A program made the position numbers and the translations under genes. 64,000 nucleotides of DNA, from positions 1-64,000 of IMG/VR virus record IMGVR_UViG_3300047548_001236; one strand, 5' to 3'. How positions within the stretch are numbered: position 1 is the stretch's first letter; each line of letters begins with the position of its first letter. Below the pieces are notes generated by a model that was not told where the DNA came from, did not search any database, and saw only the letters and a program-made list of their open reading frames with translations. Positions 9,337 to 63,852 of this stretch are shown piece after piece.

Positions 9337-9339
9337 TTG

Positions 9340-21842: not shown

Positions 21843-22020
21843 CAGGATCATTTTACGTGCTCTACTAACTGAGCTACTCTCCCATCAAAGATACACCGTT
21901 TTTACAGATTTCCCTCTTTCGAGTAACGCACCTCTGTCGATGTATCTGTGGTGGGAGAGGGTGGATTTGCACCACCGACCACGGCTTTATCGGAGCAAAA
22001 AGATTGCTGAATTGATCCTT
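21843..22020 (-). tRNA. Circularly permuted tRNA-Ile(GAU) in CAGCAA cassette 3
   Basis: 3' half 21949-21996 transcribed before 5' half 21856-21883; rejoins to 76 nt with CGGCT/AGCCG stem and loop CCGATAA. Confidence 0.85.
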
Positions 22021-22031
22021 TTGAAATTATT

Positions 22032-22157
22032 TCAGGTTCGCCTTTTACGTTGACCTAACTACTTAGTCGATCACCCCGTAGTGAAGTTGGCGGGGTGAGC
22101 AGGACTTGCACCTGCATCTACGGCTTGACATGCATAATTGTATGCTGAACCGAACCT
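22032..22157 (-). tRNA. Circularly permuted tRNA-Asp(GUC) in cassette 4
   Basis: 3' half 22088-22133, 5' half 22048-22077; stem ACGGC/GCCGT, loop ATGTCAA, G73. Confidence 0.85.
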
Positions 22158-23399: not shown

Positions 23400-24355
23400 T
23401 CTACTTGCAACGGGGAGTACGAGGGGATTTGCACCAGGCCCCTGAACCTTCTCCTCTTTTCAGCTCCTCAGGGAAGGAGCCTACTTCTGCACCTTGCTTA
23501 CTCCGCTCTGGAAGTAGAATATTGTTGCGGGTGAGATTACCCCGTATTGTGAGCGCCTTTCCGATGTACCACATCCCTTGCGAGGAGTGTTGTCGGGTTA
23601 TCCACAAGAGTCTTTCGATCATCTTGTATCGCTCAGTGCTGCCGTTTTTGAGGTCTGGCTGTTGACCTGTCGCATGTTACTACTCGTCCGTCTTTCCTAC
23701 GCCTGCCTTGCGAGCAGCTCAGAGGCGCTAACCTCCTACGTGATCATTCTGAACAACTACTCTAGCCTTGCGAGCCTTCGTAGGCCTGATTATCTTTCGA
23801 CTCAGGCATTAAGCACCTTTCGTAACACACCGGAGCAGACTTTCGCTTTTTGAATCTATGTTGCTTTGAACCAAAATCAAACGCTAATTTAATAGCTGCG
23901 AACCTACTGAGAAGTGCTGCTCCAGTTGCTCCACACCTTGTTAGATGCAGAATACCACACTCCTCCTGTCTTTCTCCTTGCGGGATACTCAACGTCACTT
24001 CACGAATCCGGTGTGACCCTTCCTCGTTGATGATCCTACACCGCCCTTCTACGCGAATAGTCGGACTATGTAGACACCTGTTGGACTTTTCCATTCGTTA
24101 GTTTGGCTGAAAACTGTTTGGGCGCCAACCCTCTTACACCTCACCGATCGGCTCTGGTGCTATCCTTTCGGACAGTCTTCCTAACTTACTGGATACCTCC
24201 TAGCTTCTAAGGCTAGAAGGGACTTGCTTTCGGTTTAATCCGAGTCAAGTCTATCCCAGGCTTGTATGAATGGACCATTTTACTGGCGCAGGTATGTAGG
24301 AATCCCTGCTTTGGGTGTGTTACCACACTTACCCTGACGACGTCATACCGCCATT
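23400..24355 (-). ncRNA. Candidate large structured ncRNA (about 950 nt)
   Basis: No credible ORF, many hairpins, downstream of a promoter and boxA within the tRNA island. Confidence 0.45.
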
Positions 24356-24644: not shown

Positions 24645-24768
24645 ACGGGAACATCTGATTTTTGCCGGCTGCTCTACCACTGAGCTACAAGATCCTTGTG
24701 GGGACCTTGGAGGGATTCGAACCCACGACCCGCTGGTTGGTATATCAATATTTGCTGTATTGTTCCCT
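24645..24768 (-). ncRNA. CAGCAA cassette 5: permuted tRNA-like RNA with G-1:C73-type acceptor
   Basis: T arm, CAAGGTCCCCA-CAA-GGATCTTG, then D arm; GGGAACA/TGTTCCC closing stem. Confidence 0.75.
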
Positions 24769-27947: not shown

Positions 27948-28078
27948 GTGTATTCTCCGTATGTTTTGTATATGTGCGTATATTTTTGTATGAACAATGT
28001 GTAGGCACGATGTAGTAATGCGTTCACAACACTATTTATACACGGTTACGCATACGATACAGCACCTACGAAGAAAAA

Positions 28079-28177
28079 TATCCTGGTTGGACTCGAACCA
28101 ACGGCCTGCGCTTTATTCCCAGCGTTTGGGTCCTTCACCATGAGGGAGCACTGCTCTACCGACTGAGCTACAGGATG
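28079..28177 (-). ncRNA. tRNA-like RNA with 34-nt anticodon loop, no CCA
   Basis: Canonical D and T arms; two hairpins in the anticodon loop. Confidence 0.6.
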
Positions 28178-28190
28178 TTTCGGAATTCGT

Positions 28191-28248
28191 TGGTACCCCC
28201 GGCCGGACTCGAACCGGCAAGCCCGAAGGCGCTTCATTTTGAGTGAAA
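28191..28248 (-). pseudogene. 3' remnant of tRNA-Leu(CAA)
   Basis: TTTCA-CTCAAAA-TGAAG, variable arm, T arm, CCA; 5' half absent. Confidence 0.8.
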
Positions 28249-29852: not shown

Positions 29853-29981
29853 TCTGGATCATCTTTGATGCGTCGTTGCGTTTACCATTCCGCCACACGA
29901 ACATTGGCTCGTGGTAGGACTCGAACCTACAATTGCTTGTGCAATACGATTTTACAATGCAGAGTTGCTGTACTGATCCAT
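29853..29981 (-). ncRNA. CAGCAA cassette 8: permuted class-II tRNA-like RNA (Tyr-GUA or Leu-like)
   Basis: TTGTAAA loop, variable arm, T arm, CCA in loop, then D arm GGCGGAATGGTAAACGC. Confidence 0.72.
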
Positions 29982-31425: not shown

Positions 31426-31520
31426 AGAATATTGGTCGGTCTCTCCCTGATGTCACACCTTTGCAGAGCGGTCTCTACAACCGTAAAGGATGCTTCGATG
31501 TTTACAGAGCCTTTGGATAA

Positions 31521-31626
31521 TGGTGGTCTCAGCAGGATTCGAACCTGCACCGCGCCGGAAGCACATTCCGGTGTTCACCCGAGGTTTCACTCTGCAGCGC
31601 TACTACCCTCAACGAACTCCGAGACC
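31521..31626 (-). ncRNA. tRNA-like RNA with acceptor, T arm and CCA but aberrant body
   Basis: GGTCTCG/TGAGACC-A-CCA; GCAGGTTCGAATCCTGC. Confidence 0.6.
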
Positions 31627-31631
31627 ATAAT

Positions 31632-31797: not shown

Positions 31798-32523
31798 TTA
31801 TATGGTGCGGCCGAAGTTCCACCCGTCAGGGAGAGTGTCTCCTTTAGCCATTTTCCTATTGTTGTGACCGTCTGTTATCCAAACAGAGTTCTCTGTTTTT
31901 CCACGCACCCAACCTTCTGGTATATCGGAATCGTTAGTTAGACGTTTATTCGTTTTACCGTCGGTTATCCACATAAACGGTTGTCTCTTTCCTTTATTCC
32001 GCTCTTTAGAGCGGTAATTTGAATCTTTCCATTTCTGAGAAATACTTTCTGATATTTTCTGTTTATGTTCTTCGGTTTTTGCCACACCTTTGTGGAGTTT
32101 GCTATTGTGTTCAGCTATACGCTTTTTGTGATCAACCGTCAACTTGCGCCCAACACCGTGCTTATTCCCTTTCATGGCGCGTGAAATAAGTTTTTTTGTT
32201 GATTCGTTATGTGTTCTACCCTCGAACGTCAACCCATTGATCTGTTTACCGCCCAGACCACCCCCAACGCAAATGTTATATGTATCAGAACGCGCGACAA
32301 AATCTTCGTTAACTATTTCTCGTTCTTTTTGAATTGCAGCGTCAAGAGTATCGAAGCGGTACATTACTTCCTTAGAAAAGGTGTCTCTACCATACTTTAC
32401 AATAGCCCTTTTTAATAGTTTTCCGGAACCCATATATCCGTCATCAACATCGTCGGTTTTATGAAGTCCAATGTATATTTTACCATTAGCCAAATTAGTA
32501 ACTTTGTAAATGGTGTAATCCAT
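31798..32523 (-). CDS. Seg-like GIY-YIG homing endonuclease with NUMOD3
   Basis: TIYKVTNLANGKIYIG, YMGSG, HNESTKKLIS. Confidence 0.9.
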   Translation of the reverse strand: MDYTIYKVTNLANGKIYIGLHKTDDVDDGYMGSGKLLKRAIVKYGRDTFSKEVMYRFDTLDAAIQKEREIVNEDFVARSDTYNICVGGGLGGKQINGLTFEGRTHNESTKKLISRAMKGNKHGVGRKLTVDHKKRIAEHNSKLHKGVAKTEEHKQKISESISQKWKDSNYRSKERNKGKRQPFMWITDGKTNKRLTNDSDIPEGWVRGKTENSVWITDGHNNRKMAKGDTLPDGWNFGRTI

Positions 32524-35632: not shown

Positions 35633-35770
35633 TCTGGATCAACTTTTTGCTGTATACTGTGCTGCTATTACACTAATCCGCCATAGTTAGATTTGGTGGC
35701 GGACCTAGGATTTGCACCTAGACTAGTCGTTTATGATACGAAAAGCTAATTTGTTGCTGGAATGATCCAT
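35633..35770 (-). tRNA. Circularly permuted tRNA-Met(CAU) in cassette 10
   Basis: 3' half 35694-35740, 5' half 35656-35682; stem GT|CGT/ACGAC, loop ATCATAA. Confidence 0.85.
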
Positions 35771-35777
35771 TATTGAT

Positions 35778-38298: not shown

Positions 38299-38429
38299 CT
38301 GGATCAACTTTTTGCTACGCGTTCTATCTACTAAACTAACCCCTGTCAGTAATATGGTCAGGGGTGTAGGATTTGCACCTACGTCTCGATCTCCCAAAGA
38401 TATGCTAATTAGTTGCTGTAATGATCCAT
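38299..38429 (-). tRNA. Circularly permuted tRNA-Pro(UGG) in cassette 11
   Basis: 3' half 38355-38401, 5' half 38318-38345; stem CG|ATC/GATCG, loop TTTGGGA, C1-G72, A73. Confidence 0.87.
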
Positions 38430-38924: not shown

Positions 38925-39018
38925 TGGAGCCCTGAATAGGATTCGAACCTACATTTGCCTTTTACAGCTCATTCCAGTTACCTTTCTCGACGTTCGTAGC
39001 GTCGGGGGATACCAGGGC
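38925..39018 (-). ncRNA. D-armless tRNA-like RNA with ACG anticodon arm and long variable region
   Basis: GCCCTGG-TATCCCC-CGACG(CTACGAA)CGTCG...T arm-CCA. Confidence 0.65.
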
Positions 39019-39068
39019 ATGTTATTTCAGCCGGAAATTCTTTAGTCGGACGCCGGATCGCCTCTGTT

Positions 39069-39422
39069 TGGTGGACTGTATCGGATTTGAACCGACATTG
39101 TAAGGTTATCTGACACCAGATGGTCGTTACCGACATGGATTTACACAGGCCCCACGGTTACCGTTGTTTACTAGTCAACAGCCCATTGGTGCCTAAGTCG
39201 TACATGCTAAAGTCAGCAAGACGAACATAGGACTTTATCTTGGTGGATCTGACGGGACTCGAACCCGCGTAACTCTGCCTTGTGTACCCCTAACGAATTA
39301 AGGTGGCAGTGTGATTCCTCACGTACACTAACAGACCCATAATTTGGTGGAACAGGGAAGTCGTGTAGTCGCTCCCAGGCGGCCCATATTGGCCCCGCAG
39401 TTATACACTCTGCGCATGCCCC
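39069..39422 (-). ncRNA. Three tRNA-like RNAs with G3.U70 Ala-type acceptors and aberrant bodies
   Basis: 39069-39184, 39241-39338, 39345-39422; each GGG.../...TCC-A-CCA. Confidence 0.65.
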
Positions 39423-41674: not shown

Positions 41675-41800
41675 TGGCGACCCCGGTAGGACTCGAACCT
41701 ACAACCTACTGATTAGATCGTGCCTTAGAAGATTCGCACTTCACTGGGCTTCCATACCCTCAGGCCAAGTCAGTTGCTCTATCCATTGAGCTACGGAGTC
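41675..41800 (-). tRNA. tRNA-Arg(UCU) interrupted by a 50-nt insert in the anticodon
   Basis: Removing 41717-41766 restores a 76-nt cloverleaf with loop CTTCTAA. Confidence 0.85.
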
Positions 41801-46664: not shown

Positions 46665-46934
46665 ATGTTTATTTATGTTATAGGGACAGTTGAAAAGCAG
46701 AAGATCGGGTTCAGCAAGGATGTTGGACGCCGACTACGTGCGTTGCAAACAGGCAATAGCGAAAAACTAGTAATTCACCATTCTGTGCAAGTTCCAGACG
46801 AACAAGCGCGATACGTCGAAAAGACAATCCATCACGAATACAACTACTTGAGAATCAAGGGTGAGTGGTTCAAAATGACTCCTGATCAAGCTAAGATGTG
46901 CATCGAGCATGCAGCGATTAGATGGGCGAGTTGA
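46665..46934 (+). CDS. GIY-YIG (T5orf172/Mug113-like) protein
   Basis: IYVIG...KIGFS..V.RRL..LQTGN...GEWF. Confidence 0.85.
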   Translation: MFIYVIGTVEKQKIGFSKDVGRRLRALQTGNSEKLVIHHSVQVPDEQARYVEKTIHHEYNYLRIKGEWFKMTPDQAKMCIEHAAIRWAS

Positions 46935-47733: not shown

Positions 47734-48630
47734 CTAGCGCCCTTCATATTTCTCTAATACTGCTTTCAGCTCTGCAATCATTCGGTCGACTGGAACCTCG
47801 CGTTTGACAGCATTGTCCAGAGAACCGTAATGATGCTCTAGGCAATTCATGAGAAGCTCTTTGACTGCTTCCTCGTCAGGGGCGTGCTGCAAGGTCGACT
47901 TGACGTACAGCTCTTCAAGATGCCTTTCAGCTTCGTTGAACCAATTGCGTAGCTTCTCCTCAGTCCATTCCCCACGACGGATCGATTTCAGGATCTCACG
48001 ATTCGCTTCGATATCAAGATCATGCTCGACAAGGATCTGCTGAGCTTCAAGAGCAAGTCGAACAACGTGATACGCAAACTTCACATCATAGCCAAACTCG
48101 TCGATTGAAGCCTGACGCTTTGGGTTCGAGGCATTAGCTTTCGTGCCGATCTTGTGAAGCTGAGCGTACGCGTATCCACGGAACTTGTGGTAGCTACCCT
48201 TATGGAGGAACAACTTGCGATTGTCTCGAACCATTTGCCCAATCTTCGATGCATACAGAACGCACCGTTGTGGGACAAACAAACTGTCGCACATGTTCGG
48301 GTTGTTTTCCATACACAGGTGGAAGTACTTCACGATCGAATAGATACTGAAATCGTATTCCTGACGAGCCTCAGCATCCATGATGTGGTGTTCCTGATAT
48401 TGTTCGAATCGCTGGATCTGTCGACCGAACCCAAGGATTTCTCCTCTTAGATGAGGGAAGACATCTTCCTTAGGCGGAATACAGAAACCATACACGTCCA
48501 TATCAGACGTATCGCTAGACACGCCATAGGCAACAGAACCCATGATCACCTCATAGTGAACATTCTGAGGCAGCCACTTAGGAGGAGCGATGAGCCCCTT
48601 TTGCTTCATTAGTTGAACACGAGATGCCAT
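47734..48630 (-). CDS. Pol-beta superfamily nucleotidyltransferase
   Basis: GSVAYG...SDMDVYG; NPN; YDVKFAYH..RL. Confidence 0.88.
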   Translation of the reverse strand: MASRVQLMKQKGLIAPPKWLPQNVHYEVIMGSVAYGVSSDTSDMDVYGFCIPPKEDVFPHLRGEILGFGRQIQRFEQYQEHHIMDAEARQEYDFSIYSIVKYFHLCMENNPNMCDSLFVPQRCVLYASKIGQMVRDNRKLFLHKGSYHKFRGYAYAQLHKIGTKANASNPKRQASIDEFGYDVKFAYHVVRLALEAQQILVEHDLDIEANREILKSIRRGEWTEEKLRNWFNEAERHLEELYVKSTLQHAPDEEAVKELLMNCLEHHYGSLDNAVKREVPVDRMIAELKAVLEKYEGR

Positions 48631-52891: not shown

Positions 52892-53299
52892 CTACCGGTA
52901 GCGCTGGACGTTCACACCAAGTTTTTGCAATAATGTTATCCCTGCAGCGTCACGGTACATTTCATCGTAGTACACCTCTTTAATTCCAGCTGTGTACATC
53001 TGCTTGGCACACTCAACACATGGGGAATGCGTAACGAAAAACACCGCCCCTTCCGAACTTTCAGTGCACTTTGCTAGCTTAGCAATGCAGTTGGCCTCGG
53101 CATGCAATACTTCGATTTTTGTCTTACCGTTTTCGTCCTCACATGTATTGTCAAACCCTGGAGGGGTTCCATTGTACCCTATCGAAAGGATTCTTCCATC
53201 TTTAACAGCTATCGCGCCTACTTTAAGCCTCTGTGCCTTTGACAGAGAGGCAAAAACATGAGCCACTTGCATATAAGCATCTTTCATTTCTTGCTTCAT
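52892..53299 (-). CDS. cd: dCMP deaminase
   Basis: GYNG, HAEAN, SPCVECAK. Confidence 0.92.
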   Translation of the reverse strand: MKQEMKDAYMQVAHVFASLSKAQRLKVGAIAVKDGRILSIGYNGTPPGFDNTCEDENGKTKIEVLHAEANCIAKLAKCTESSEGAVFFVTHSPCVECAKQMYTAGIKEVYYDEMYRDAAGITLLQKLGVNVQRYR

Positions 53300-54165
53300 C
53301 GCTTGATCCTTCCTTTAACAAACCCGTCGGGAATGATTTCACCCTCTTTGAACTGGGTCTCAGTGTCTCCGTTATTGTACCACGATCTCTTGAGTCTCAC
53401 AATTTTACCAGATCTAACATCATCCCAGTAAGACGTTGCTATTCGAGATAGGTGACCTGATTCAGCATTTCGCTTGCCTTGTACTTTACCACCAAGCGAC
53501 GATGACTTTCGACGTAGCTCATCGTCAAGAAAGCACCCCGTTCTCTTTTCGTGCAATGCCTTTTTAACGTTTTTTATTCGCTTTTCTTCATCAACCATTG
53601 CACGAATGCGGTCCATGTGGCCGTTCTCTGCATTTCGTCTACCCTGGACAGAACCCCCCATTGACGCATACATCTTCTGTTGTTCTTCCGTTAGGGAAAG
53701 CCACCCTGTTTTATTTTCGTACATTGATTTCTTCAACGCTTCGACGCGCTTCTCGTGATCTATCATTGAGCGGATTCTTTCCATGTGACCGCTCTCAACA
53801 TTTCGGGCCCCTTGCATTTTTCCTCCAATGGAGTTGTATGTGATAAGGGTACCGTCTGTTTCATACCCCAAGGTGAGGTTATTGTTATGCATGTTCAAAA
53901 ATGATGGATTGTTGGCCGCATTCACCCTTTTCAAAAACCTTGTCTCGTACTGGTATGCTTGTTCGGGTGTATCAAACACTCTTATCTTCACTATTTCAAA
54001 TGAAGTGATACCTTCATCGGCTATTATCTGATTTACGACCTTAGATGAAGTCGTGTAGCCATTCTCTTTTAGGAGATTATCGGGATTTGAATGTTTTGAT
54101 CTCTTGCTTCCAGCGTAGTACACGCCTGAGCTCTTGTGCCGGATTATGTAAAAATATGGTTTCAT
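53296..54165 (-). CDS. GIY-YIG-like homing endonuclease with three internal repeats
   Basis: YFYIIR...YYAGS; GG..QG.RN.E.GH repeated three times; late promoter upstream. Confidence 0.75.
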   Translation of the reverse strand: MKPYFYIIRHKSSGVYYAGSKRSKHSNPDNLLKENGYTTSSKVVNQIIADEGITSFEIVKIRVFDTPEQAYQYETRFLKRVNAANNPSFLNMHNNNLTLGYETDGTLITYNSIGGKMQGARNVESGHMERIRSMIDHEKRVEALKKSMYENKTGWLSLTEEQQKMYASMGGSVQGRRNAENGHMDRIRAMVDEEKRIKNVKKALHEKRTGCFLDDELRRKSSSLGGKVQGKRNAESGHLSRIATSYWDDVRSGKIVRLKRSWYNNGDTETQFKEGEIIPDGFVKGRIKR

Positions 54166-54482
54166 AGTAGACCTCCTATTGAACTCTACCACTATTTATA
54201 TTTTTGTTCATCTCGGCATGTATAACAAGACTACCTTGATCAAGCCACCAAAGTGATGGCCTTATTAAGGTAGTCTTTCTTCAACTGAACCTTGTCCTGA
54301 CGGCGAATCGCCTTCTTGGACTTCTGGTGAACGCCGCCACCGTTACGGTTGATCAGATGCTGAACGAACGGGTTGCGTTCCTTCGGCGCTTGTTTCTTCT
54401 TGGTCTTCATCTTGTGCCTCCACATAGAAATGCTTGCTGTTGTACACCACATACAGCAAGCATATGTATCTTTCAACAGGGC

Positions 54483-54827
54483 CTAGAGTAGTTTCAGATT
54501 GCCGGTGATTGGTTGAAGGTTTTCGTGCGTGTCTGGCCCAACAGCAATGCACGTATTGGTCGGAACGCCGTTGAATACGGTTAGTCCCGAGTCGGTGATC
54601 AATTCAGCTATCAGACCAGCTTCGCGCGCTTTGTTATAGACCTCCAGCAATTCTTCTTCACTATTGACTCCTACAGCAATTTTTGTGAAAAGTCCACTGA
54701 GCCATTCTTTCACACGAGGATCATCCATATGAAGTAGAGTTGCTTTCATTGATGCATGTGCACCTTGTGCGATCTCTTTGCCTCTAGGCATCTTAAGATC
54801 TTTACGCATCACAATAATCTGTTTCAT
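54483..54827 (-). CDS. pth2: Peptidyl-tRNA hydrolase, Pth2 type
   Basis: KQIIVMRKDLKM..GK..AQGAHA; DSGLT; TCIAVGP. Confidence 0.92.
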   Translation of the reverse strand: MKQIIVMRKDLKMPRGKEIAQGAHASMKATLLHMDDPRVKEWLSGLFTKIAVGVNSEEELLEVYNKAREAGLIAELITDSGLTVFNGVPTNTCIAVGPDTHENLQPITGNLKLL

Positions 54828-55321
54828 TTTGCCTCTCTTACACCGTATCGCAAACGGTATTGGGTTTTGTATGGATACCACATGCCATGCATCGGTTTGA
54901 ACGTCGTTGGGTCGGTATAGAACCGTTCGACGGTCCGTTCAGCTTCCAGATTATCCACATATTCCTTGAGAACCATGTACAGAGGACCTGTGTTCGACAT
55001 TGCAAACAAATGGTCTTCTGTAGGCATGGCTACCGTTCTAGCCATGTACAAATTATCGTGGAAAATTGCAGTGGGTCCTGTCATGAAAGCCTTTTGAGCT
55101 TTCGCAAAGCGCTCACACACATCATCGAATTCCGGAGGCTTTCGAGTTACAGACCAAGCGTTTGGGGTGGAAGGGGTTTCAACAGCGAGGTGTCGATCCA
55201 TCACAGACTTCCACTCGTCATACGACGTTGTGATGGTGCACTCAAAGCCGTTCAGTGGTGTATCTTCGAACAGGCTGTCCTTACGAGAGGGGATTACCTG
55301 CACACTTTCAATTTGCATCAT
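54824..55321 (-). CDS. Hypothetical protein
   Basis: ORF in operon. Confidence 0.55.
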   Translation of the reverse strand: MMQIESVQVIPSRKDSLFEDTPLNGFECTITTSYDEWKSVMDRHLAVETPSTPNAWSVTRKPPEFDDVCERFAKAQKAFMTGPTAIFHDNLYMARTVAMPTEDHLFAMSNTGPLYMVLKEYVDNLEAERTVERFYTDPTTFKPMHGMWYPYKTQYRLRYGVREAK

Positions 55322-55829
55322 TGTTCTTCTCTCCATCTTGCTCTGCAGTCGGGGCAATGAAAATCAATCCAGTAGCTGTCTGCAGTCGGATCGTAGTTTC
55401 CTGTGTTGCTCCCGTGTTTCTTTGTAAGTCCAGGGTGTTGACAGGTTGCCTGTAGTTTGGCCAATTCTCCATCGAGCTTTTCACTGCGACGGTCAATACC
55501 TGCTAGCTTCTTACGGATCTCTTCTTGGGTCATTTCGTTGCTTTCTTGGGAAAACAGGTGCACTTTGTTCCGCACGGTTTTCCTACAATACAAAAATTGT
55601 TGGGGCAGATCTTTTTGATTGCTCTAACCTTTCCAAGTAATGTCAATTCACCACCCACCATACTTCATCTTTTGAATGTCTTGGAGAGCTTGAATCAGCA
55701 TACCGATGTTCTTAATGGAGACGGAAGAAGTTTCCTCCCGTCCCCAATAATTATCGGTGTGCGTGATGGTGACTTCTTCGCCGCCATCGTAAGCGATGGT
55801 GGTATGTTCATCAACGCGGCAACGATATG

Positions 55830-56468
55830 TCACTTTTGCTTCTCCTCAAGCACTTTACGAGCCATGTCATGGTTTGCTCTTTCAAAAACACGACCCAGAC
55901 CGTAGTAAACCTGTTCCCAAACCCAAATAAACGGTTTGTGAGACAGCTCCCACACAATGCTTGCAGGCCACAGAAGAACCCAGGACGATACACGATCTTT
56001 GTTCTTACGAACAGAGTAGGGATAGCTGTCTGAATTCAGGAAGGTATCGAAGGATACATCAGCTGTCGATTTTTCATCTTTTTCACTCGGCGACATCACG
56101 ACATCACGAGCTTTGCGCTTCCAGTCAAGTTCTTCACGAGTTTTCCGGTCTGCCCAGGCGGCATACGAAATCTGGATGTTCTCTTTATTTTTGTTGATGT
56201 AGTTCGGTAGCTTCCACATTCTGGTGTAGACTGCACCGACAGCCACATACAGAACCAAATAGACAATCAACATCAACGGATTTGCTGCAATTGAAGCAAG
56301 AATCGGAATGTTGAACACCCACTCACCAACCGCCCATGCAAGCGCAATCACACCAAGGCCGATGAAGAAGCTGTCAGTTTCACTGGCCCAAACGAGGCCT
56401 CCCAGCACAATTAACAGATACAAACCAAGCCAAAAACCAGCCACGCTTGCGAAGATCATTTCAACCAT
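55830..56468 (-). CDS. Membrane protein
   Basis: Several hydrophobic helices. Confidence 0.7.
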   Translation of the reverse strand: MVEMIFASVAGFWLGLYLLIVLGGLVWASETDSFFIGLGVIALAWAVGEWVFNIPILASIAANPLMLIVYLVLYVAVGAVYTRMWKLPNYINKNKENIQISYAAWADRKTREELDWKRKARDVVMSPSEKDEKSTADVSFDTFLNSDSYPYSVRKNKDRVSSWVLLWPASIVWELSHKPFIWVWEQVYYGLGRVFERANHDMARKVLEEKQK

Positions 56469-56471
56469 TAT

Positions 56472-57065
56472 TCACTCCTTATTTTTACGGTTATCAAACC
56501 ATTGCTTCCATACTTTACGAGAGACTGTATCATACAGATCTTCATACCCTGTTTCAACCGCCTCGTCAGAACCGCCCAGCTTCACGTGAAACATAGCTGG
56601 AGCTCCATGATTTTGTTTGCAGAATGTTTCGGCTTGCTCGAGATTGTCTGCTATCTTCATCAACTCGTGCGAACCTTCGAAGAACTCGCCCTGCCAGTTT
56701 AGCTTGAGGCCATAGCAGATCACGTCGATCTCCCAGTAGTCGACCAACATAGCAAGATCCCACACCTGTTCCTTCGTCAGGAACTGGGCTTCGTCGATTA
56801 GTATGAAGTCGGGCTTGGGTTGGTTGGATTGAAACAACCGGAAGACACGAACGCTAGGAAGAATGTCTTTAGATACGATCACGCATTCTTCTTCAATCCC
56901 AAGACGACTTGAAATCGTGGTCGTCCGGTCGTCAATCTCGGGTTTCATCAGAAGAGTCTTAAAACCCTTTTGCTTAAGCATGTAGTTTTTGGTCAGTAGA
57001 CTCAAGCTCTTACCCGAATTCATGCTCGAAAATATGAACGTTAGCTTACACATTTCTTCTCCCAC
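56472..57065 (-). CDS. tk: Thymidine kinase
   Basis: SSMNSGKS, ISSRLG, LIDEAQFL, CYGL, FEGS. Confidence 0.92.
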   Translation of the reverse strand: MGEEMCKLTFIFSSMNSGKSLSLLTKNYMLKQKGFKTLLMKPEIDDRTTTISSRLGIEEECVIVSKDILPSVRVFRLFQSNQPKPDFILIDEAQFLTKEQVWDLAMLVDYWEIDVICYGLKLNWQGEFFEGSHELMKIADNLEQAETFCKQNHGAPAMFHVKLGGSDEAVETGYEDLYDTVSRKVWKQWFDNRKNKE

Positions 57066-57568
57066 TGCCCCATGATAGACATGGCATGCTTCATTTGTTT
57101 CATAAGGATACCGTTTTCGGAGTCACACCGAATCCAACGTTTGATTCCAAGAGTGGTGTTGAAATCGTAGTTGCTGTCGTCAAACAGCAAGAAGTCGTTA
57201 TAGGGTCCAAACTCTTTCAGATAGTCTGCAACCTCGACGGCACGACCATTCAGACGGTTGTATTTATCAAGCTCGTTCAACGGGTTGGTTTTCCAGTTGG
57301 GCCATGGGAATTTTCCCCGAAATCCCGCGTTCCTGAACGAAGAGTTGATCCAGTGGTAGTATACCGGATCGTCGTGTTTAATGTGGTTTTTCCACGTAGA
57401 AATCAGAACAAAGTCGACGTTGTAAAGATCGTCGATCTTGTTCATGAAATCGATGGCGATAGGATCAAAGCGATCCCACATCATGTGGTTAGTGCACGTG
57501 TGACCTAATTGCACACGTGCACTACAGAATACACCATCGATGTCGAGGAAGATTGCGTATTTAGACAT
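57041..57568 (-). CDS. HAD phosphatase (Swiss-army-knife RNA repair type)
   Basis: IFLDIDGV, LISTW, R..EV..YL, LFDD. Confidence 0.8.
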   Translation of the reverse strand: MSKYAIFLDIDGVFCSARVQLGHTCTNHMMWDRFDPIAIDFMNKIDDLYNVDFVLISTWKNHIKHDDPVYYHWINSSFRNAGFRGKFPWPNWKTNPLNELDKYNRLNGRAVEVADYLKEFGPYNDFLLFDDSNYDFNTTLGIKRWIRCDSENGILMKQMKHAMSIMGQWEKKCVS

Positions 57569-57784
57569 CTCACTCCCCAAAGAAACCAGCTTCGTAACCG
57601 TACACCATATATGCATCCTCAGCGCGTTTACTCCACAGAGCAATCGCAGCTTCGTTACCCGAAGCGACAGCAGCGTGCATCATCGCCAGGCAGAAGTCAT
57701 AAACGTTGCGCAGATTCATCAGCATTGGTCGATCTCCTTTGTTGAAATCAATATAGGCGACTCCTGTATGAGTGGCAACAGCAA

Positions 57785-58078
57785 TCACTCTTCCCAACGA
57801 TGGGTTTCATAATCCCAGTGTCGATGGTCATACACCTTGATATTGAACATAACCCCAAGCGTTTCTACTCGGAAGTCGGGACCCTGATGATCCGACCCCC
57901 ACCAATGCAGATCGATGAGAAAGTCAAATACAGTTTGGAACGACTTGAAGTTTGTGATCTGGATTTCTGCACTCTTATTTTTGGTTAGTGTCCAGTGCTT
58001 ATAGAAGTAGTCCACTTGTGATTTTTCTTTGATAGGCGGACTATAAAACAGGTTATCTATTTTCAGAGAAAGTCTCAT
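57785..58078 (-). CDS. Hypothetical protein
   Basis: DH.GP...YDHRHWD. Confidence 0.55.
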   Translation of the reverse strand: MRLSLKIDNLFYSPPIKEKSQVDYFYKHWTLTKNKSAEIQITNFKSFQTVFDFLIDLHWWGSDHQGPDFRVETLGVMFNIKVYDHRHWDYETHRWEE

Positions 58079-58614
58079 CACTCTCTCCCGTGATGATCGA
58101 TCGGCTTCCACGTCTTCTTTTTCATGATTCGACGAACATCGTCCATATTCAGCGGCATGTAGTTGTGACAGTCGACGCCGACGTCGAAGCTCAGAGCGTT
58201 AGGATCGTCAGGTAGAGATCCATGGCTATGGCCATATAGCATCCAGGCACCATGGTGAGACTTATTCCACACGCGCATTGAGTAGTGGCACAGAACGATG
58301 AACTGGCCATCGATAGTCATTTCGTGGTAGTCCTTAATCCACTGCCACCCTTTCAGGCGACGTCCTACCTTGTCGTGATTGCCAAGCACAAGGTGCTTAC
58401 GACCATTGAGACGATCGAGAATCGACTGGCCCTTTTCTTGATCCATGAAACAGAAGTCGCCGACGTGAAACACATCATCGTCGACACCAATCCTGCTGTT
58501 CCAGTTCTCGATCATTTTTGAATCCATTTCTTCCTTGGATTTGAAAGGTCGATTACTGTATTTGATAATGTTGGCGTGCCCAAAATGGGTATCGGACGTA
58601 AACCATGTAGTCAT
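58078..58614 (-). CDS. Calcineurin-like phosphoesterase
   Basis: FTSDTHFGH, VGDF, GNHD, HY, YGHSH, DVGVD. Confidence 0.9.
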   Translation of the reverse strand: MTTWFTSDTHFGHANIIKYSNRPFKSKEEMDSKMIENWNSRIGVDDDVFHVGDFCFMDQEKGQSILDRLNGRKHLVLGNHDKVGRRLKGWQWIKDYHEMTIDGQFIVLCHYSMRVWNKSHHGAWMLYGHSHGSLPDDPNALSFDVGVDCHNYMPLNMDDVRRIMKKKTWKPIDHHGRE

Positions 58615-58806
58615 TTTGCTATTCTCCACAATCCATTCTCCACGGGCACATCGAAAGCATCAGAGTGGAGCAATCATCTTCACCAAAACACGGAGGTGGA
58701 GGTTGCTGTCTGAGCTTCCTGATCTGCTCGAAGAGTTCTTGTTGTTTTTGTTTGTTTCCTAGACGTTCCTGAACAACAGATTCGTCTAGCAATTGTTGAA
58801 TCCTGC

Positions 58807-59106
58807 TCACACCCCAGCTTTCTCTTTCCACTTGGCAAGTTTCCGGCTGTTGAGAGCTTTTAGGTAATGTTCGTCGGCCAGCACACCGTAATGAATGTAG
58901 ATGATGTCGATCATACAGTTGATCACATCCAGAGCTTCGCCAACTACACCGTCGACACCTTGCTGCTTATATGACTTGCCCTCAGCAATCTGAACCTCTT
59001 GGGCCAATTCGCCGAGCTCCGTCATCGCATGGGTCAACACGTCTTGGATGGTACGTCCGTTGTCGACCTGACGTGACGTTTCGAGGATTTCAGAAACAAG
59101 TGTCAT
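58807..59106 (-). CDS. MazG-like NTP pyrophosphohydrolase
   Basis: TELGELAQE...GEALDV. Confidence 0.75.
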   Translation of the reverse strand: MTLVSEILETSRQVDNGRTIQDVLTHAMTELGELAQEVQIAEGKSYKQQGVDGVVGEALDVINCMIDIIYIHYGVLADEHYLKALNSRKLAKWKEKAGV

Positions 59107-59284
59107 TCAGCTACTCCAATGATGTCTTCGTCAGTTTCTTTGTCGTCCCAGCGATACCATCCTTTATCGTTTCGGCATGTTTGCTTTCCAGTCGTGTCAG
59201 CAAATACTGTGACGCCGCTTGACTTACGGACAAAGGTGTATTGTCTACCCTTGCGATCGACGTAGTTTTGATTTTCTTCGAACT

Positions 59285-59686
59285 TCATTCGATGCCGTCC
59301 AACTCTTTTTGCAGCTTTTCGAGTTGCTTCCGCTTGCGTTCCAGCTCTGTAGCCTTACGCTTTTCTTCGCGTGCAATTCGAGCCTTCTCTTCCTTTTCTT
59401 GCTGCTTACGCAGTTTCTCCTGCCGCGCTTCGTAAAGCTCTTTAGCCTTTTCCAAATGCTGCTCGACAGTCGATGGAGTAATCTCCTCAACCAATCGTAG
59501 AAGGTAATTTGCTTTTAGTTCGTACCGATATTGGTTAGCAAAACTGATCAACTTTTCTAGCTCAGCCACTCGTTTATCGTCCACCTCGTGCCAATCAATA
59601 CCGTCTGTGATAGTCCGAACAGTTTCGGTGCTTTCGTAGTCGTATTGCTCGTCACTATAGACTTTGACAATCTTAATTCGTCTCAT
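59285..59686 (-). CDS. Hypothetical coiled-coil protein
   Basis: ORF in operon. Confidence 0.6.
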   Translation of the reverse strand: MRRIKIVKVYSDEQYDYESTETVRTITDGIDWHEVDDKRVAELEKLISFANQYRYELKANYLLRLVEEITPSTVEQHLEKAKELYEARQEKLRKQQEKEEKARIAREEKRKATELERKRKQLEKLQKELDGIE

Positions 59687-60792
59687 ACTGTATCCTCATT
59701 GTGCTTGATACCATTCACGTCATGGTTGTTGCTTCCATAGAACCAGTGCTTTTGCGTCGCTACGTGGTTCGCTCGAACGAATTTTGCAACTGATGTCTTG
59801 AAGTCTTTGTATTCAAAACTATCAGCCAGCCTTACTACGTAACCTTCGTGGATGTCACGGTCGGTCTTTTCATTGTAGAGCTTCTTGATTGCCGCTTCGT
59901 CCCAGATCCCGTCAAACAAGACTGGCACCATCGGCATATCAAGCAAAGAGAACCATTCAATGGTATCGTCCCAGCTTAGACATTGATTATACTCGTTCCA
60001 AATCGAAAAGCCAAGTAGATATCCAGGCAGATCTTCATATTTGATCGAATGGACTGCATAAAGGTTCTCAGCGCAAACACGCCATCCTTCTGGCAGCTCA
60101 TATGAGCGCCGCATCCAGAAATTCTTTGCCCAATCTCGAGTGTAGTGACTACGACCATCAACGGACCGTGCGTGGCAGTAGTCCCGATACCCCGAGAAGT
60201 TTTCACCATCCATCTTGCGAGTAACAATCACTCGCTTCCCCTCGAACACCGAGAGATCGCTCATCGTCCGATCGTCTTCGGTTTTGCCTGGAGACCACGG
60301 AAGGTGATAGGTGCGAGGATATTTGACGTATTCGACAAAACGAATCGGCTCCAGATCACCAACGAGCTCTTCACCCATCGACAGATATTCAAACCGATTG
60401 TAGTCGGCCAGAACCTTACGAACGGATTCGTCGTTGTAAAGAGGTCCTTTTGTACGTCGACCATCTGTTAGGATCACATTACCCCACTTATCGTAGACGT
60501 GATCAGGATACATGTCTTCCGGCAGCGCAATCTTCTCGATCTTTGCCGCCCGACGAACATCCTCGACGCTCAGCCAAGTCGTTTCGGCTTTATAGTGACA
60601 CCCATCTTTACCGTCGTCGCAGAGCGTTGCTCCATTGTCTAGGTAATATCCGCCATCTGTCCAGAGACGACGTTCGATGACGTGATGAGCATCAATCTTG
60701 TGCCCGTTGTGAAGCCCATTTCCACAGACAACACAACGGTGCCGGTCTCGTTCGAATACCAAATTTCTGAAATCGTCTCTTGATAGTAGCAT
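59683..60792 (-). CDS. HNH-domain / ATP-dependent RNA ligase fusion
   Basis: CVVC...DAHH...NGATLC..CH N-terminus; KYPRTYHLPWSPG, KMDGEN, EGYVVR, KFVR. Confidence 0.85.
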   Translation of the reverse strand: MLLSRDDFRNLVFERDRHRCVVCGNGLHNGHKIDAHHVIERRLWTDGGYYLDNGATLCDDGKDGCHYKAETTWLSVEDVRRAAKIEKIALPEDMYPDHVYDKWGNVILTDGRRTKGPLYNDESVRKVLADYNRFEYLSMGEELVGDLEPIRFVEYVKYPRTYHLPWSPGKTEDDRTMSDLSVFEGKRVIVTRKMDGENFSGYRDYCHARSVDGRSHYTRDWAKNFWMRRSYELPEGWRVCAENLYAVHSIKYEDLPGYLLGFSIWNEYNQCLSWDDTIEWFSLLDMPMVPVLFDGIWDEAAIKKLYNEKTDRDIHEGYVVRLADSFEYKDFKTSVAKFVRANHVATQKHWFYGSNNHDVNGIKHNEDTV

Positions 60793-61398
60793 AACATTAC
60801 TCTTAATTCTTGCGAATGGAAGGGACGAGTCGGCCAGTATACTGCTTACCGAATACATCAACGGTTGCAATTTGATTGTTGGCGTAACCCACAAGGAGAC
60901 CCTGGACGTAGGTGTTATTGTAGACGATGGTTCTGATCATGCGATGACCTCGTACACACGGTGATATTCACCGTCTTGATTCGCCCATTGTTTTGTTTTA
61001 CGAAGCACCCGCTGAGCATCTACCTTGACGCCAATGAACGTCACCATATTGTCGATCTCGTCGATTGCATCCTTGAGCTTATCGTTACGAGTCGATAGTT
61101 GGGATCCACCTTGGCAGGTCACCTCCACGACAAACTCATCATTGAAGTGTTTTGGCATCAGAACTTTATCCATATTACTGACCTTTCTGGCTGAGTTTGC
61201 GGATGACGATGTCACGGTTGGTGATGGCAGCGGCAATCTTCTTGATTGCATCTTCCTTGGATTCGTTATCCAGGATCATCTTGACGAATGCTTCATTCAT
61301 TTTGGTGGTCGTTTCCATGATCTTGCTCCTCATTTGATAAACAACATATAGAAGGTTCGACGGACGCAGTCAACAAAAAAAGGGCCGAAGCCCTCTTT

Positions 61399-61957: not shown

Positions 61958-62482
61958 TCAGATCTTTCCTTCAATGGTTTCGAGTACGCGTGATACTACA
62001 AATTGCTCTTGGCTGTCAACAGGTACATCCCACACAGGCCAAGGAGATTGGCGAATGAAATTGGTGATTGCATCTCCAGCTTCTTGTGCATACTGTTGAT
62101 CCGGTGTTCTGCCTCGAGGGTCATAGTTGTCACGACCTGGTAGAACGAAAAAGATGGATTCGAACTTAGTGTCTGCAATGTGCTTGAATAGATCGACGCC
62201 GTGATTGTCAAACTGGTTTTGTCCATAAAACAGAGAGCAGTATAGAGGACTATCAGTTACAACAACATCGACATTCTCAAATTGCTTGATCCGCCGATAT
62301 TTCTCTGAGAATACAAGAAGCTCATCAGACAGTGTCCAGTAATCCTGGCGACGATGGAGCTCTTTTGTATACTCGATAACCAATTCAACATCCATCGACA
62401 GCGCTTTGAGCTCTCTGAACACTCCTGCTGCGAGTGTTGATTTACCTGCACTAGGCGGTCCTGTAAAGTTAACGAGAAGCAT
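61958..62482 (-). CDS. P-loop kinase (NadR/AAA_28-like)
   Basis: GPPSAGKST, EYTKE, VVTDSPL. Confidence 0.8.
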   Translation of the reverse strand: MLLVNFTGPPSAGKSTLAAGVFRELKALSMDVELVIEYTKELHRRQDYWTLSDELLVFSEKYRRIKQFENVDVVVTDSPLYCSLFYGQNQFDNHGVDLFKHIADTKFESIFFVLPGRDNYDPRGRTPDQQYAQEAGDAITNFIRQSPWPVWDVPVDSQEQFVVSRVLETIEGKI

Positions 62483-63155: not shown

Positions 63156-63629
63156 TCACTCCAAGATGTATACATACGGTTTGACGTTCTTCAACTCTGA
63201 TTCGATGATAGCAGCAATCACGTTCCAATCACCGCCTCCAAGACCTGCGCCAATTTGGGGCATTGCAACTGCTGAAATACCGTAGATTTCAAAGAAGCTG
63301 TTGATTTTACTCATCGACTCAGCAACTGCATCATAGCTAACATAGCGCTGTCCATCACGACCATAAAGGTTTTGCGTGATTGCGTTAACAATAACTTTGT
63401 AGTTGTCGGGGTCGTTCACACGATCGCCACAAGGAACCGTAATGACGTCTCCCAGCTTTAAGTGATGGTGCTGTTCGTAAGCAGAACGATAGCGGTCATA
63501 CGCCTTCGGATACTTCTCGCGAATAATCTTCGCAACGCCAGATCCCATAACACCTTGAGCATTGCACCCATGTACAATCACTTTGATTGGGGTCTGGAAC
63601 AGATCGCCTTTGACATATTCAATTTGCAT
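63156..63629 (-). CDS. Macro domain (ADP-ribose processing) protein
   Basis: GDLF, HGCNAQGVMGSGVA, MPQIGAGLGGGDW. Confidence 0.92.
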   Translation of the reverse strand: MQIEYVKGDLFQTPIKVIVHGCNAQGVMGSGVAKIIREKYPKAYDRYRSAYEQHHHLKLGDVITVPCGDRVNDPDNYKVIVNAITQNLYGRDGQRYVSYDAVAESMSKINSFFEIYGISAVAMPQIGAGLGGGDWNVIAAIIESELKNVKPYVYILE

Positions 63630-63852
63630 TTTCGAGGTCCTCCGGCATATCAATTTGGATTACTGTGTTGGCGTCCACGCAGAGGCGGTATCTTCCATCA
63701 TCTGTAACAGCTATCCCTCCAGCTTGTTCGCACAATGCTACTTTTCGATTGTGTTCGGGCACAGCAACAAAAAAAGCATAACTCACCATTGTACCAATGA
63801 TGCTGACCATAACTCCTGCAAAGATCGCCCATAGAGTTGTTTCTGTATCCAT
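63619..63852 (-). CDS. Small membrane protein
   Basis: N-terminal transmembrane helix; AGGAG SD. Confidence 0.55.
   Translation of the reverse strand: MDTETTLWAIFAGVMVSIIGTMVSYAFFVAVPEHNRKVALCEQAGGIAVTDDGRYRLCVDANTVIQIDMPEDLENAN

What the first reader, a model, noticed from the sequence alone, without database searches (positions are those of the whole stretch)
54483..60792. RNA-repair and translation-rescue toolkit that could mature the split tRNAs
Seen: an HNH-RNA ligase fusion, a HAD phosphatase, a calcineurin-like phosphoesterase and Pth2 lie within about 6 kb, with a nucleotidyltransferase at 47734. Known: T4 Pnkp/Rnl1 heal and seal cut tRNA, and Pth2 is mainly the archaeal/eukaryotic type. 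Inference: a nuclease-ligase fusion is a natural cut-and-join candidate for the permuted and insert-bearing tRNAs.
Basis: partly seen in the sequence, partly recalled or inferred. Interest (0 to 1): 0.62.

Follow-up and report, generated by a model that had tools for sequence, protein, structure and literature searches.

The report
Jumbo-phage RNA repair gene set
The genes are real and form an ordinary jumbo-phage kit for mending cut tRNAs and freeing stalled ones, but the "permuted tRNAs" it was proposed to mature are Y-RNA-like tRNA mimics that go with a phage Ro60-like protein and need no cut-and-join enzyme.

Summary
On the minus strand lie Pth2, a HAD "Swiss-army-knife" phosphatase, a metallophosphoesterase, an HNH + RNA-ligase fusion and, further off, an RlaP nucleotidyltransferase. 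A P-loop kinase and a Macro domain lie just upstream. The window is the first 64 kb of a 283-kb freshwater jumbo phage with about 56 tRNAs, a two-piece tmRNA and GOLLD RNA. This gene complement, including HNH-Rnl2 fusions, has been described for jumbo phages as repair of host-cut tRNAs.

The proposed link to "split tRNAs" is not supported. The CAGCAA cassettes have the layout of YrlA-type Y RNAs: a terminal stem with a conserved motif, a T-arm, a loop-closed 7-bp acceptor stem and a D-arm. They track a Ro60-like gene (G000:71132-72592): 10 of 11 cassette-bearing records have it intact. Only 4 of those 11 carry the HNH-ligase, which also occurs in phages with no cassette hit. The phage has two more RNA ligases, T4 Rnl1-like and Naegleria Rnl5-like.

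One tRNA-Arg(UCU) carries a 50-nt insert in its anticodon loop that a relative lacks. Whether and how it is removed is open. The role of the HNH domain is untested.

The parts
54483..54881 (-). Peptidyl-tRNA hydrolase, Pth2 (archaeal/eukaryotic type). The probable start is the ATG at 54827.
   Evidence: PF01981 E 5e-31; TIGR00283 over its cut-off; PDB 2ZV3 E 3e-23; phrog_1866 E 1.5e-37
57041..57643 (-). HAD phosphatase of the 'Swiss Army Knife' RNA-repair family. Inferred to be an RNA 3'-phosphatase. The probable start is 57568.
   Evidence: PF18143 49.3 bits; DIDG and DD motifs; a homologue lies directly after the HNH-ligase in relative G015
58078..58629 (-). Calcineurin-like metallophosphoesterase. 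Inferred to be a 2',3'-cyclic or 3'-phosphoesterase.
   Evidence: PF12850; phrog_547 E 2e-55; PDB 1XM7 E 5e-11; all metal-binding motifs present
59683..60894 (-). HNH nuclease domain + conserved middle region + ATP-dependent RNA ligase (PF09414) fusion. The probable start is 60792.
   Evidence: The CxxC..DAHH..N..C..H residues and the ligase motifs KMDGEN, EGYV and KxVR are invariant in 7 homologues; the last Cys of the zinc motif is absent in one of them. Homologues occur in Salicola, Ralstonia, Caulobacter, Acinetobacter and Halogranum viruses.
61958..62482 (-). P-loop kinase, AAA_28/KTI12-like with a weak PSTK-like match. It is a candidate polynucleotide or tRNA 5'-kinase.
   Evidence: PF13521 E 2e-10 and KTI12 E 9e-6; Walker A motif GPPSAGKST; homologues about 2 kb from the fusion in G013 and G014
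63156..63653 (-). Macro domain protein (binds or hydrolyses ADP-ribose derivatives)
   Evidence: PF01661 E 2.5e-11; homologues lie near the fusion in G010 and near Pth2 and the cassettes in G006
47734..48630 (-). [quoted passage not shown]
   Evidence: PF10127 E 1e-21; phrog_388 E 9e-48; GS..DxD motif. The family adds 1-2 NMP to damaged RNA 3' ends (bioRxiv 10.64898/2025.12.29.696909).
56472..57065 (-). Thymidine kinase. It is interspersed among these genes and is not part of RNA repair.
   Evidence: PF00265 E 2e-30

Best explanation
The segment is one part of a dispersed phage gene set that keeps the translation apparatus working during infection. The proposed pathway runs as follows.

1. Host defence nucleases cut tRNAs and leave 2',3'-cyclic-phosphate and 5'-OH ends.
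2. The metallophosphoesterase and the HAD_SAK phosphatase clear the 3' end.
3. A P-loop kinase phosphorylates the 5' end.
4. RlaP restores one or two lost 3' nucleotides.
5. An ATP-dependent ligase seals the break. Candidates are the HNH-ligase here, or the Rnl1-like and Rnl5-like ligases at about 201-205 kb.
6. Pth2 recycles tRNA from peptidyl-tRNA dropped by stalled ribosomes. It works alongside the phage's own tmRNA, about 56 tRNAs and CCA-adding enzyme.

What is shown: domain identities, intact catalytic motifs, recurrence of the fusion in other large phages, and partial conservation of the neighbourhood.

What is inferred: every substrate and the order of the steps. The HNH domain looks catalytically intact, but its substrate (DNA or RNA) is unknown.

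The CAGCAA cassettes are not substrates to be spliced. They are Y-RNA-like partners of a Ro60-like protein, a module that in bacteria sits in the same operon as RNA repair genes.
For: - Catalytic motifs are.
- The record is a 282,855-bp phage with 56 tRNAs, a tmRNA and GOLLD RNA, a CCA-adding enzyme, an Rnl5-like ligase (PDB 5COT, E 4e-61), an Rnl1-like ligase (PDB 2C5U, E 6e-25) and an AAA_33 kinase.
- Iyer et al. 2021 describe the same complement in jumbo phages: HNH-Rnl2 fusions, SAK-HAD, RlaP, tRNAs and ROT/TROVE.
- In relative G015 the order is HNH-ligase, HAD_SAK, Y-like cassette, Ro60-like gene, all contiguous.
- In G006, Pth2 and Macro lie 2-4 kb from four cassettes.
- Y RNA reading: the 486-aa neighbour carries DUF2828, DUF7788 and VWA. 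Its model's top 13 PDB matches are all Ro60/TROVE proteins. It is adjacent to cassettes in 9 of 12 loci and present in 10 of 11 cassette-bearing records, with a remnant in the 11th.
- The acceptor-like stem covaries, with 4-9 double changes per pair. Sub-threshold YrlA matches fall on the cassettes. A 64-nt copy keeps only the stem, the CAGCAA motif and the A-rich strand.
Against: - No expression or activity data exist. The 'RNA-Seq' runs that hold parts of the region behave as DNA of related phages.
- The cluster is not conserved around the fusion in CcrBL9, SCTP-2, RsoM2USA or ME3.
- Thymidine kinase and unassigned ORFs are interspersed, so some members could serve nucleotide metabolism or signal degradation instead.
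- The kinase assignment is weak.
- The fusion has no close solved relative, and its predicted structure was unusable.
- No host nuclease is known for this uncultured phage.
Confidence: 0.6

Rival explanations
1. The HNH-ligase fusion cuts and rejoins precursor RNAs. It matures the permuted CAGCAA cassettes and the insert-bearing tRNAs into working tRNAs, with the phosphatases and RlaP tidying the ends.
For: - HNH nucleases leave 3'-OH and 5'-phosphate ends, which is what an ATP-dependent ligase needs (established enzymology).
- tRNA-Arg(UCU) at 41675-41800 carries a 50-nt insert inside its anticodon loop. An orthologue in G009 lacks it.
- No group I intron, RtcB or archaeal splicing endonuclease was found in the phage.
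- Several cassettes encode N-CCA after a 7-bp acceptor stem.
- The fusion co-occurs with cassettes in G000, G006, G010 and G015. RsoM2USA has related cassettes that lack CAGCAA.
Against: - Complete cassette-bearing genomes G002, G003 and G004 have no homologue of the fusion or of its HNH half.
- CcrBL9, SCTP-2 and ME3 have the fusion but no full-length cassette hit above 24 bits; SCTP-2 gives one at 23.6 bits, E 0.005.
- The cassettes track a Ro60-like gene instead.
- The conserved stem + CAGCAA + A-rich module also occurs with no tRNA-like part at all. This fits a protein-binding site, not a splice signal.
- The junctions I could infer sit at different tRNA positions in different cassettes, so there is no common splice geometry.
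- The phage has a T4 Rnl1 homologue, the ligase type known to act on anticodon loops.
Confidence: 0.08
2. The two halves of the fusion do unrelated jobs. The HNH domain attacks host or competitor DNA, or acts as a homing-type nuclease. The ligase half repairs RNA independently. This is the suggestion of Iyer et al. 2021.
For: - The authors state this in PMC7824862.
- The HNH part matches phage HNH endonuclease PHROGs and, weakly, the IscB HNH domain.
- The genome carries other homing-type nuclease genes: GIY-YIG at 53296-54192, T5orf172 at 46665-46934 and NUMOD3 at 31798-32523.
- Ligases of this clade also exist without the HNH domain, in Atu_ph07, XacN1 and Phosso.
Against: - The fusion, including a conserved roughly 100-residue middle region, is kept from proteobacterial phages to a haloarchaeal virus at 29-54% identity.
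- That persistence is unusual for a selfish homing nuclease and suggests the domains work together.
Confidence: 0.2
3. The neighbours are not one pathway. The HAD protein, the metallophosphoesterase, the Macro domain and thymidine kinase serve nucleotide salvage or destroy host nucleotide and ADP-ribose alarm signals. Their closeness to a ligase is incidental.
For: - Thymidine kinase and dCMP deaminase lie in the same stretch.
- The neighbourhood is not conserved in four isolate phages.
- Iyer et al. assign Macro domains and phosphoesterases also to counter-signalling.
- The promoter and terminator scan was no better than shuffled sequence.
Against: - The HAD protein belongs to the RNA-repair-specific SAK family and sits next to the fusion in G015.
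- RlaP, three RNA ligases, Pth2, the tmRNA and Ro60/Y RNAs in one genome make an RNA-centred reading the simpler one.
Confidence: 0.12

Closest known systems
RNA repair complement of jumbo phages (Iyer, Anantharaman, Krishnan, Burroughs & Aravind 2021, PMC7824862)
   Same: It has the same parts list. That list covers Rnl2-family ligases with an N-terminal HNH domain, standalone SAK-type HAD phosphatase, RlaP, Macro, many tRNAs, several non-redundant ligases in one genome, and a ROT/TROVE protein with a tRNA-like partner.
   Different: This phage is an uncultured freshwater relative. Here Pth2, a tmRNA and about ten Y-like RNA copies are added. No biochemical data exist for either.
Phage T4 Pnkp + Rnl1 repair of PrrC-cut tRNA-Lys
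   Same: It follows the heal-and-seal logic. An Rnl1 homologue is present in this genome at about 204-205 kb.
   Different: The kinase and phosphatase are separate proteins of other families rather than one Pnkp. The ligase in the flagged segment is PF09414-type with an HNH domain, not Rnl1. The host nuclease is unknown.
Bacterial Ro60 (Rsr) with YrlA Y RNAs next to RtcB/RtcA (Chen et al. 2014, PMC4201824); Thermus phage phiLo Ro60 with Yrl1/Yrl2 (PMC12135203)
   Same: - The RNAs have a terminal stem with a conserved 5'-strand motif, then V, T, acceptor-like and D stem-loops.
- A Ro60-fold protein is encoded beside them.
- They are linked to RNA repair genes.
- M. smegmatis YrlA has a 7-bp acceptor stem, is cut by RNase P and receives CCA.
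   Different: - The motif is CAGCAA rather than GNCGAA/CGAA.
- The protein matches DUF2828/DUF7788 and not the Pfam TROVE model.
- Copy number is about ten, scattered through a tRNA array.
- Rfam YrlA scores stay below the family threshold.
- Binding is untested.
Archaeal and eukaryotic tRNA splicing, and the permuted tRNA genes of Cyanidioschyzon merolae
   Same: The gene order is the same: 3' half, linker, 5' half, with the precursor ends paired.
   Different: There is no bulge-helix-bulge motif and no splicing endonuclease domain. There is no RtcB. No consistent splice position could be inferred. A Ro60 partner is present instead.

Membership tests
ATP-dependent RNA ligase, PF09414 (Rnl2/Rnl5-like nucleotidyltransferase) | Pfam model over its gathering score | tested here: met
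   90.2 bits against a cut-off of 27, residues 221-373
ATP-dependent RNA ligase, PF09414 (Rnl2/Rnl5-like nucleotidyltransferase) | Motif I lysine (KxDG) plus motifs IV (EGxxx) and V (KxK/R-like), conserved among homologues | tested here: met
   KMDGEN, EGYV and KxVR are invariant in 7 sequences
Canonical T4 Rnl2 | C-terminal domain after motif V that is needed for nick sealing | tested here: not met
   The protein ends about 30 residues after motif V. There is no PDB relative at E <= 0.01 for the sequence and only E 0.6 to NgrRnl for the profile.
ATP-dependent RNA ligase | Self-adenylylation and sealing of 3'-OH/5'-phosphate RNA | not testable with these tools
   Needs purified protein
HNH (beta-beta-alpha-metal) nuclease | CxxC ... 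HH ... N ... CxxxCH zinc and catalytic motif | tested here: met
   The motif is read. C, C, DAHH, N, C and H are invariant; the last Cys is absent in one homologue. PHROG HNH families match at E 1e-6 to 7e-4. No Pfam HNH model reaches E 0.01.
Pth2 peptidyl-tRNA hydrolase | Equivalog model over its cut-off and full-length match | tested here: met
   TIGR00283 101.8 bits against a cut-off of 82; PF01981 positions 1-115 of 115; PDB 2ZV3
HAD_SAK_2 (RNA-repair HAD) | Pfam model over its cut-off and the DxD nucleophile motif | tested here: met
   49.3 bits against a cut-off of 27.5; DIDG at residues 34-37
RlaP | PF10127 over its cut-off and the Pol-beta GS..DxD motif | tested here: met
   77.9 bits against a cut-off of 23; motif
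RlaP | Gene next to an RNA ligase | tested here: not met
   It lies 11 kb from the nearest ligase, with the topoisomerase II genes between them
tRNA splicing system (endonuclease + ligase acting on introns or permuted genes) | Phylogenetic co-occurrence of the enzyme with its substrates | tested here: not met
   The fusion is absent from 3 of 5 complete cassette-bearing genomes. It is present in 3 isolate phages that give no full-length cassette hit above 24 bits.
tRNA splicing system (endonuclease + ligase acting on introns or permuted genes) | Spliced product observed | tested here: inconclusive
   The only runs labelled RNA behave as DNA of relatives. No joint matches a splice.
Ro60 / Y RNA (for the cassettes) | Ro60-fold protein encoded beside the RNAs | tested here: met
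   The top 13 Foldseek PDB matches are Ro60/TROVE, at E 1e-7 to 5e-5. It is adjacent in 9 of 12 loci. The Pfam TROVE model itself gives no match.
Ro60 / Y RNA (for the cassettes) | Rfam YrlA model over its gathering score | tested here: not met
   Best match 35.8 bits against a threshold of 69, covering the tRNA-like part only
Ro60 / Y RNA (for the cassettes) | Terminal stem, T-arm and closed acceptor-like stem supported by covariation (the D-arm is seen by inspection and single-sequence folds only) | tested here: met
   15 of 19 pairs show double changes. The outer stem changes to six other complementary versions.

The most novel reading that the evidence does not exclude
The HNH-ligase fusion is a self-contained RNA cut-and-seal enzyme. 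Its HNH domain trims damaged or inserted RNA to give 3'-OH/5'-phosphate ends that its own ligase domain then joins. Possible substrates are the 50-nt insert in tRNA-Arg(UCU), or cut tRNAs presented on the Ro60/Y-RNA platform that lies next to it in relative G015.
Probability: 0.1. Interest if true: 0.75.

Novelty: new member of a known kind. Interest (0 to 1): 0.3.

Why it matters
The kit itself adds one more uncultured example to a pattern already catalogued for jumbo phages. Two things make the follow-up useful.

First, it removes a tempting but wrong link. What look like permuted tRNA genes in phage tRNA arrays can be Y-RNA-like tRNA mimics paired with a Ro60-like protein that the Pfam TROVE model misses.

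Second, it leaves two clean open questions. One is what the conserved HNH domain on an RNA ligase cuts. The other is whether a phage tRNA with a 50-nt insert inside its anticodon loop is spliced or dead. A bacterial-virus protein-only tRNA splicing route would be new.

Tried and rejected
- **Megablast against isolate phages.** The segment gave no match.
- **Structure of the fusion.** The AlphaFold model came from a 7-sequence alignment and had mean pLDDT 41.8, so I made no fold search. Sequence and profile searches of the PDB gave nothing usable.
- **Short pattern scan of IMG/VR.** The 14-base pattern returned mostly chance hits. The two-anchor pattern worked.
- **Sequencing runs.** The first call failed. 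The second found only the probable source sample and small shares in wastewater runs labelled RNA-Seq. Laid on 5,001 bases, those behave as DNA of related phages and show no splice joints.
- **Bulge-helix-bulge or fixed splice site in the cassettes.** I looked for these by hand. Chimeric anticodon stems could be built, but at different positions (28/29 to 31/32), with enough freedom to arise by chance. I dropped this in favour of the Y RNA reading.
- **Resemblance to U6 snRNA.** The ACAGCAA...AGC stretch resembles the U6 ACAGAGA/AGC motifs. I judged this a coincidence.
- **Promoter and terminator scan.** It was no better than shuffled sequence.
- **Burroughs & Aravind 2016.** The paper could not be fetched.
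- **Genetic code.** No alternative code was applied, although a CTA-anticodon tRNA is present.

Full report
**Context.** The window is bases 1-64000 of a 282,855-bp IMG/VR virus record rated complete. It comes from a freshwater metagenome. Nearly all genes and RNAs in the window are on the minus strand. ARAGORN finds 38 tRNAs in the window and 56 in the genome. Rfam adds a GOLLD RNA at 23528-23965 and a two-piece, alphaproteobacterial-type tmRNA at 8962-9374.

**The observation.**
- Pth2 lies at 54483-54881 and passes the TIGR00283 cut-off. Its nearest solved relatives are archaeal Pth2 proteins.
- The HAD protein at 57041-57643 belongs to the RNA-repair-specific HAD_SAK_2 family and has the DxD nucleophile motif.
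- The protein at 58078-58629 has every metallophosphoesterase motif.
- RlaP lies at 47734-48630.
- The ORF at 59683-60894 is a fusion and most likely starts at the ATG at 60792. Residues 40-112 carry a zinc-type HNH motif. Residues 221-373 are a PF09414 RNA ligase with a KxDG motif I. A conserved stretch of about 100 residues lies between them.

Thymidine kinase and several unassigned ORFs are interspersed.

**What is already known.** The fusion matches a full-length PHROG family. It has 29-54% identical homologues in Salicola phage SCTP-2, Ralstonia phage RsoM2USA, Caulobacter Bertelyviruses, Acinetobacter phage ME3, huge uncultured phages and Halogranum tailed virus 1. Ligase-only relatives occur in Atu_ph07, XacN1 and Phosso. 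Iyer et al. 2021 describe Rnl2-family ligases fused to N-terminal HNH domains, SAK-type HAD phosphatases, RlaP, Macro domains, tRNA arrays and ROT/TROVE proteins. They treat these as the jumbo-phage answer to host attacks on tRNA, and they suggest the HNH domain attacks DNA. RlaP enzymes add one or two nucleotides to damaged RNA 3' ends. The toolkit is therefore a new member of a catalogued kind.

**The rest of the genome.** The flagged segment is not the whole kit.
- The phage has a second PF09414 ligase with an N-terminal OB domain at about 200.9-202.0 kb. It matches the Naegleria Rnl5 ligase at E 4e-61.
- It has a T4 Rnl1 homologue at about 204.1-205.2 kb, E 6e-25 to PDB 2C5U.
- It has an AAA_33 kinase near 244.7 kb and a CCA-adding enzyme near 76.6-77.0 kb.
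- It has no RtcB, Pfam-TROVE, splicing endonuclease, SmpB or KptA match.

**The "split tRNAs".** Six to ten elements on the minus strand share one layout:
1. a 6-7-nt stem strand, three bases, then CAGCAA;
2. a variable stretch that often holds a small hairpin;
3. a T-arm;
4. a 7-nt acceptor 3' strand, often followed by N-CCA;
5. a 3-70-nt linker;
6. the complementary acceptor 5' strand;
7. a D-arm;
8. an A-rich strand;
9. the complement of the first stem.

A two-anchor pattern scan of IMG/VR returned 29 loci, of which about a dozen hold real relatives. A generic scan found copies whose outer stem is changed to six other self-complementary versions.

An alignment of 15 copies gives a consensus fold of outer stem, T-arm and loop-closed acceptor stem. 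Fifteen of its 19 pairs show double compensatory changes. A covariance model built from that alignment finds about ten copies in this genome and several in every related record.

These elements are therefore real and are not tandem tRNA artefacts. One 64-nt copy at G000:68847-68910 keeps only the stem, the CAGCAA motif and the A-rich strand.

**What the cassettes are.** I compared all ORFs of the genome with the cassette loci from other phages. One 486-aa protein stood out: G000:71132-72592, next to the cassettes at 72854-73121. It is adjacent to cassettes in 9 of 12 loci. It carries DUF2828, DUF7788 and a weak VWA match. A moderate-confidence model (pLDDT 70.8) has Ro60/TROVE proteins as all of its top 13 PDB matches. 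These include the Ro60 of Thermus phage phiLo and Deinococcus Rsr.

A whole-record search finds this gene in G000 and in nine of the ten related cassette-bearing records. The tenth (G004) keeps a remnant directly beside its best cassette.

The cassette layout matches the YrlA class of bacterial and phage Y RNAs. That class has a Ro-binding terminal stem with a conserved 5'-strand motif, then V, T, acceptor-like and D stem-loops. The M. smegmatis member has a 7-bp acceptor stem, is cut by RNase P and receives CCA (PMC4201824). Phage phiLo has two Y-like RNAs beside its Ro60 (PMC12135203). Rfam's YrlA model touches three cassettes below threshold.

I therefore read the cassettes as Y-RNA-like tRNA mimics. 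The CAGCAA stem would be the protein-binding module. Binding is inferred, not shown.

- Among the five complete cassette-bearing genomes, the HNH-ligase is present in G000 and G006 and absent from G002, G003 and G004. This holds whether I search with the whole protein or with the HNH half.
- Counting fragments, 4 of 11 cassette-bearing records have the fusion (G000, G006, G010, G015), while 10 of 11 have the Ro60-like gene.
- In the other direction, CcrBL9, SCTP-2 and ME3 carry the fusion, yet CcrBL9 gives only a partial hit, SCTP-2 a partial hit and one weak full-length hit (23.6 bits), and ME3 none.
- RsoM2USA has related cassettes that lack CAGCAA. G011 has one weak hit and G015 two strong ones.
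- Each complete cassette-bearing genome has some RNA ligase, but no single family is universal. Rnl1 is in four, PF09414 in four, RtcB in one.

A looser link does exist. In G015 the order is HNH-ligase, HAD_SAK, cassette, Ro60-like gene. In G006, Pth2 and Macro lie within a few kb of four cassettes. This echoes the bacterial rsr-yrlBA-rtcBA operon. It fits a shared role in RNA surveillance and repair, not in maturation of the cassettes.

**Insert-bearing tRNAs.** tRNA-Arg(UCU) at 41675-41800 scores 58.5 bits as a tRNA but carries a 50-nt insert between anticodon-loop positions 34 and 35. The orthologue in G009 is a normal 76-nt gene without the insert. A second tRNA-like gene at 28077-28178 has a 27-nt insert at 37/38 and no CCA. 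Neither insert has the CAGCAA motif or a group I intron signature. I cannot tell whether they are spliced or are broken genes.

**Mechanism and confidence.** The best-supported reading is heal-and-seal repair of host-cut tRNAs plus recycling of peptidyl-tRNA, with the steps given under Best explanation. Domain identities and motifs are shown. All substrates are inferred. The neighbourhood is only partly conserved, and the promoter and terminator scan carries no signal.

Noticed in passing
window 38300-38428, 35635-35769, 29855-29980, 24647-24767, 22034-22157, 21845-22018, 14268-14356 (all minus strand); also G000:72995-73121, 72854-72990, 68847-68910: About ten Y-RNA-like cassettes are scattered through the tRNA arrays. 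Each has an outer stem, the CAGCAA motif (CAGCAT in one copy), a T-arm, a loop-closed 7-8-bp acceptor stem (often followed by CCA) and a D-arm. One 64-nt copy has only the stem module. The copy number is far above the one to four known in bacteria.
   Followed up: yes
G000:71132-72592 (minus), 7 kb beyond the window end: A 486-aa Ro60-like protein (DUF2828 + DUF7788 + VWA) that the Pfam TROVE model misses. Its model matches Ro60 structures. It lies beside cassettes in this phage and in nine other loci.
   Followed up: yes
window 41675-41800 (minus): tRNA-Arg(UCU) has a 50-nt insert inside the anticodon loop. The insert contains a copy of the loop sequence CTTCTAA. The orthologue in related record G009 (19001-19074) has no insert.
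   Followed up: partly
window 28077-28220 (minus): A tRNA-like gene with a 27-nt insert at position 37/38 has a mismatched acceptor stem and a T-run instead of CCA. It is preceded by an orphan T-arm + acceptor + CCA that gives a weak YrlA match.
   Followed up: partly
window 39241-39338, about 39070-39185, about 38925-39020, about 31520-31630 (minus): Further T-arms whose matching acceptor 5' strand lies 66-88 nt upstream. ARAGORN's default run misses them. They may be more tRNAs with inserts or long arms.
   Followed up: no
window 23528-23965 (minus): A full-length GOLLD RNA (194.9 bits) sits in the middle of the tRNA array.
   Followed up: no
window 8962-9374 (minus): A phage-encoded two-piece (permuted, alphaproteobacterial-type) tmRNA. 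No SmpB gene was found in the genome.
   Followed up: partly
window 21238-21313 and 18681-18757 (minus): A tRNA with a CTA (amber-reading) anticodon, and a tRNA with an 8-nt anticodon loop (tgca). I inferred no recoding and applied no other genetic code.
   Followed up: no
G000: about 200873-202018, about 204077-205201, about 244713-245192, and the open frame holding 76617-77006 (all minus): Outside the window lie a Naegleria-type Rnl5 ligase, a T4 Rnl1 homologue, an AAA_33 kinase and a CCA-adding enzyme. With the fusion in the window, that makes three RNA ligases in one phage.
   Followed up: yes
window 38313-38404 and 35770-35776: In contigs of related wastewater phages, the inside of the cassette is replaced by 97-98 other bases while the flanks are kept. 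The cassette bodies seem to be swapped as modules.
   Followed up: no
Ralstonia phage RsoM2USA MG752970.1, 75218-75329 and 49873-49984 (minus): Permuted tRNA-like elements with an outer stem, a closed acceptor stem and a D-arm, but no CAGCAA motif. No homologue of the Ro60-like gene was found in that phage.
   Followed up: partly
window 53296-54192, 46665-46934, 31798-32523: GIY-YIG, T5orf172/MUG113 and NUMOD3 proteins are present. They look like homing-type nuclease genes among the replication and tRNA genes.
   Followed up: no
G000:73983-74603 and 74898-75326 (minus): A PP-loop ATPase (TilS-like family) and a cytidylyltransferase-like protein lie next to the Ro60-like gene and the second tRNA array. 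Both are conserved beside cassettes in several relatives.
   Followed up: no
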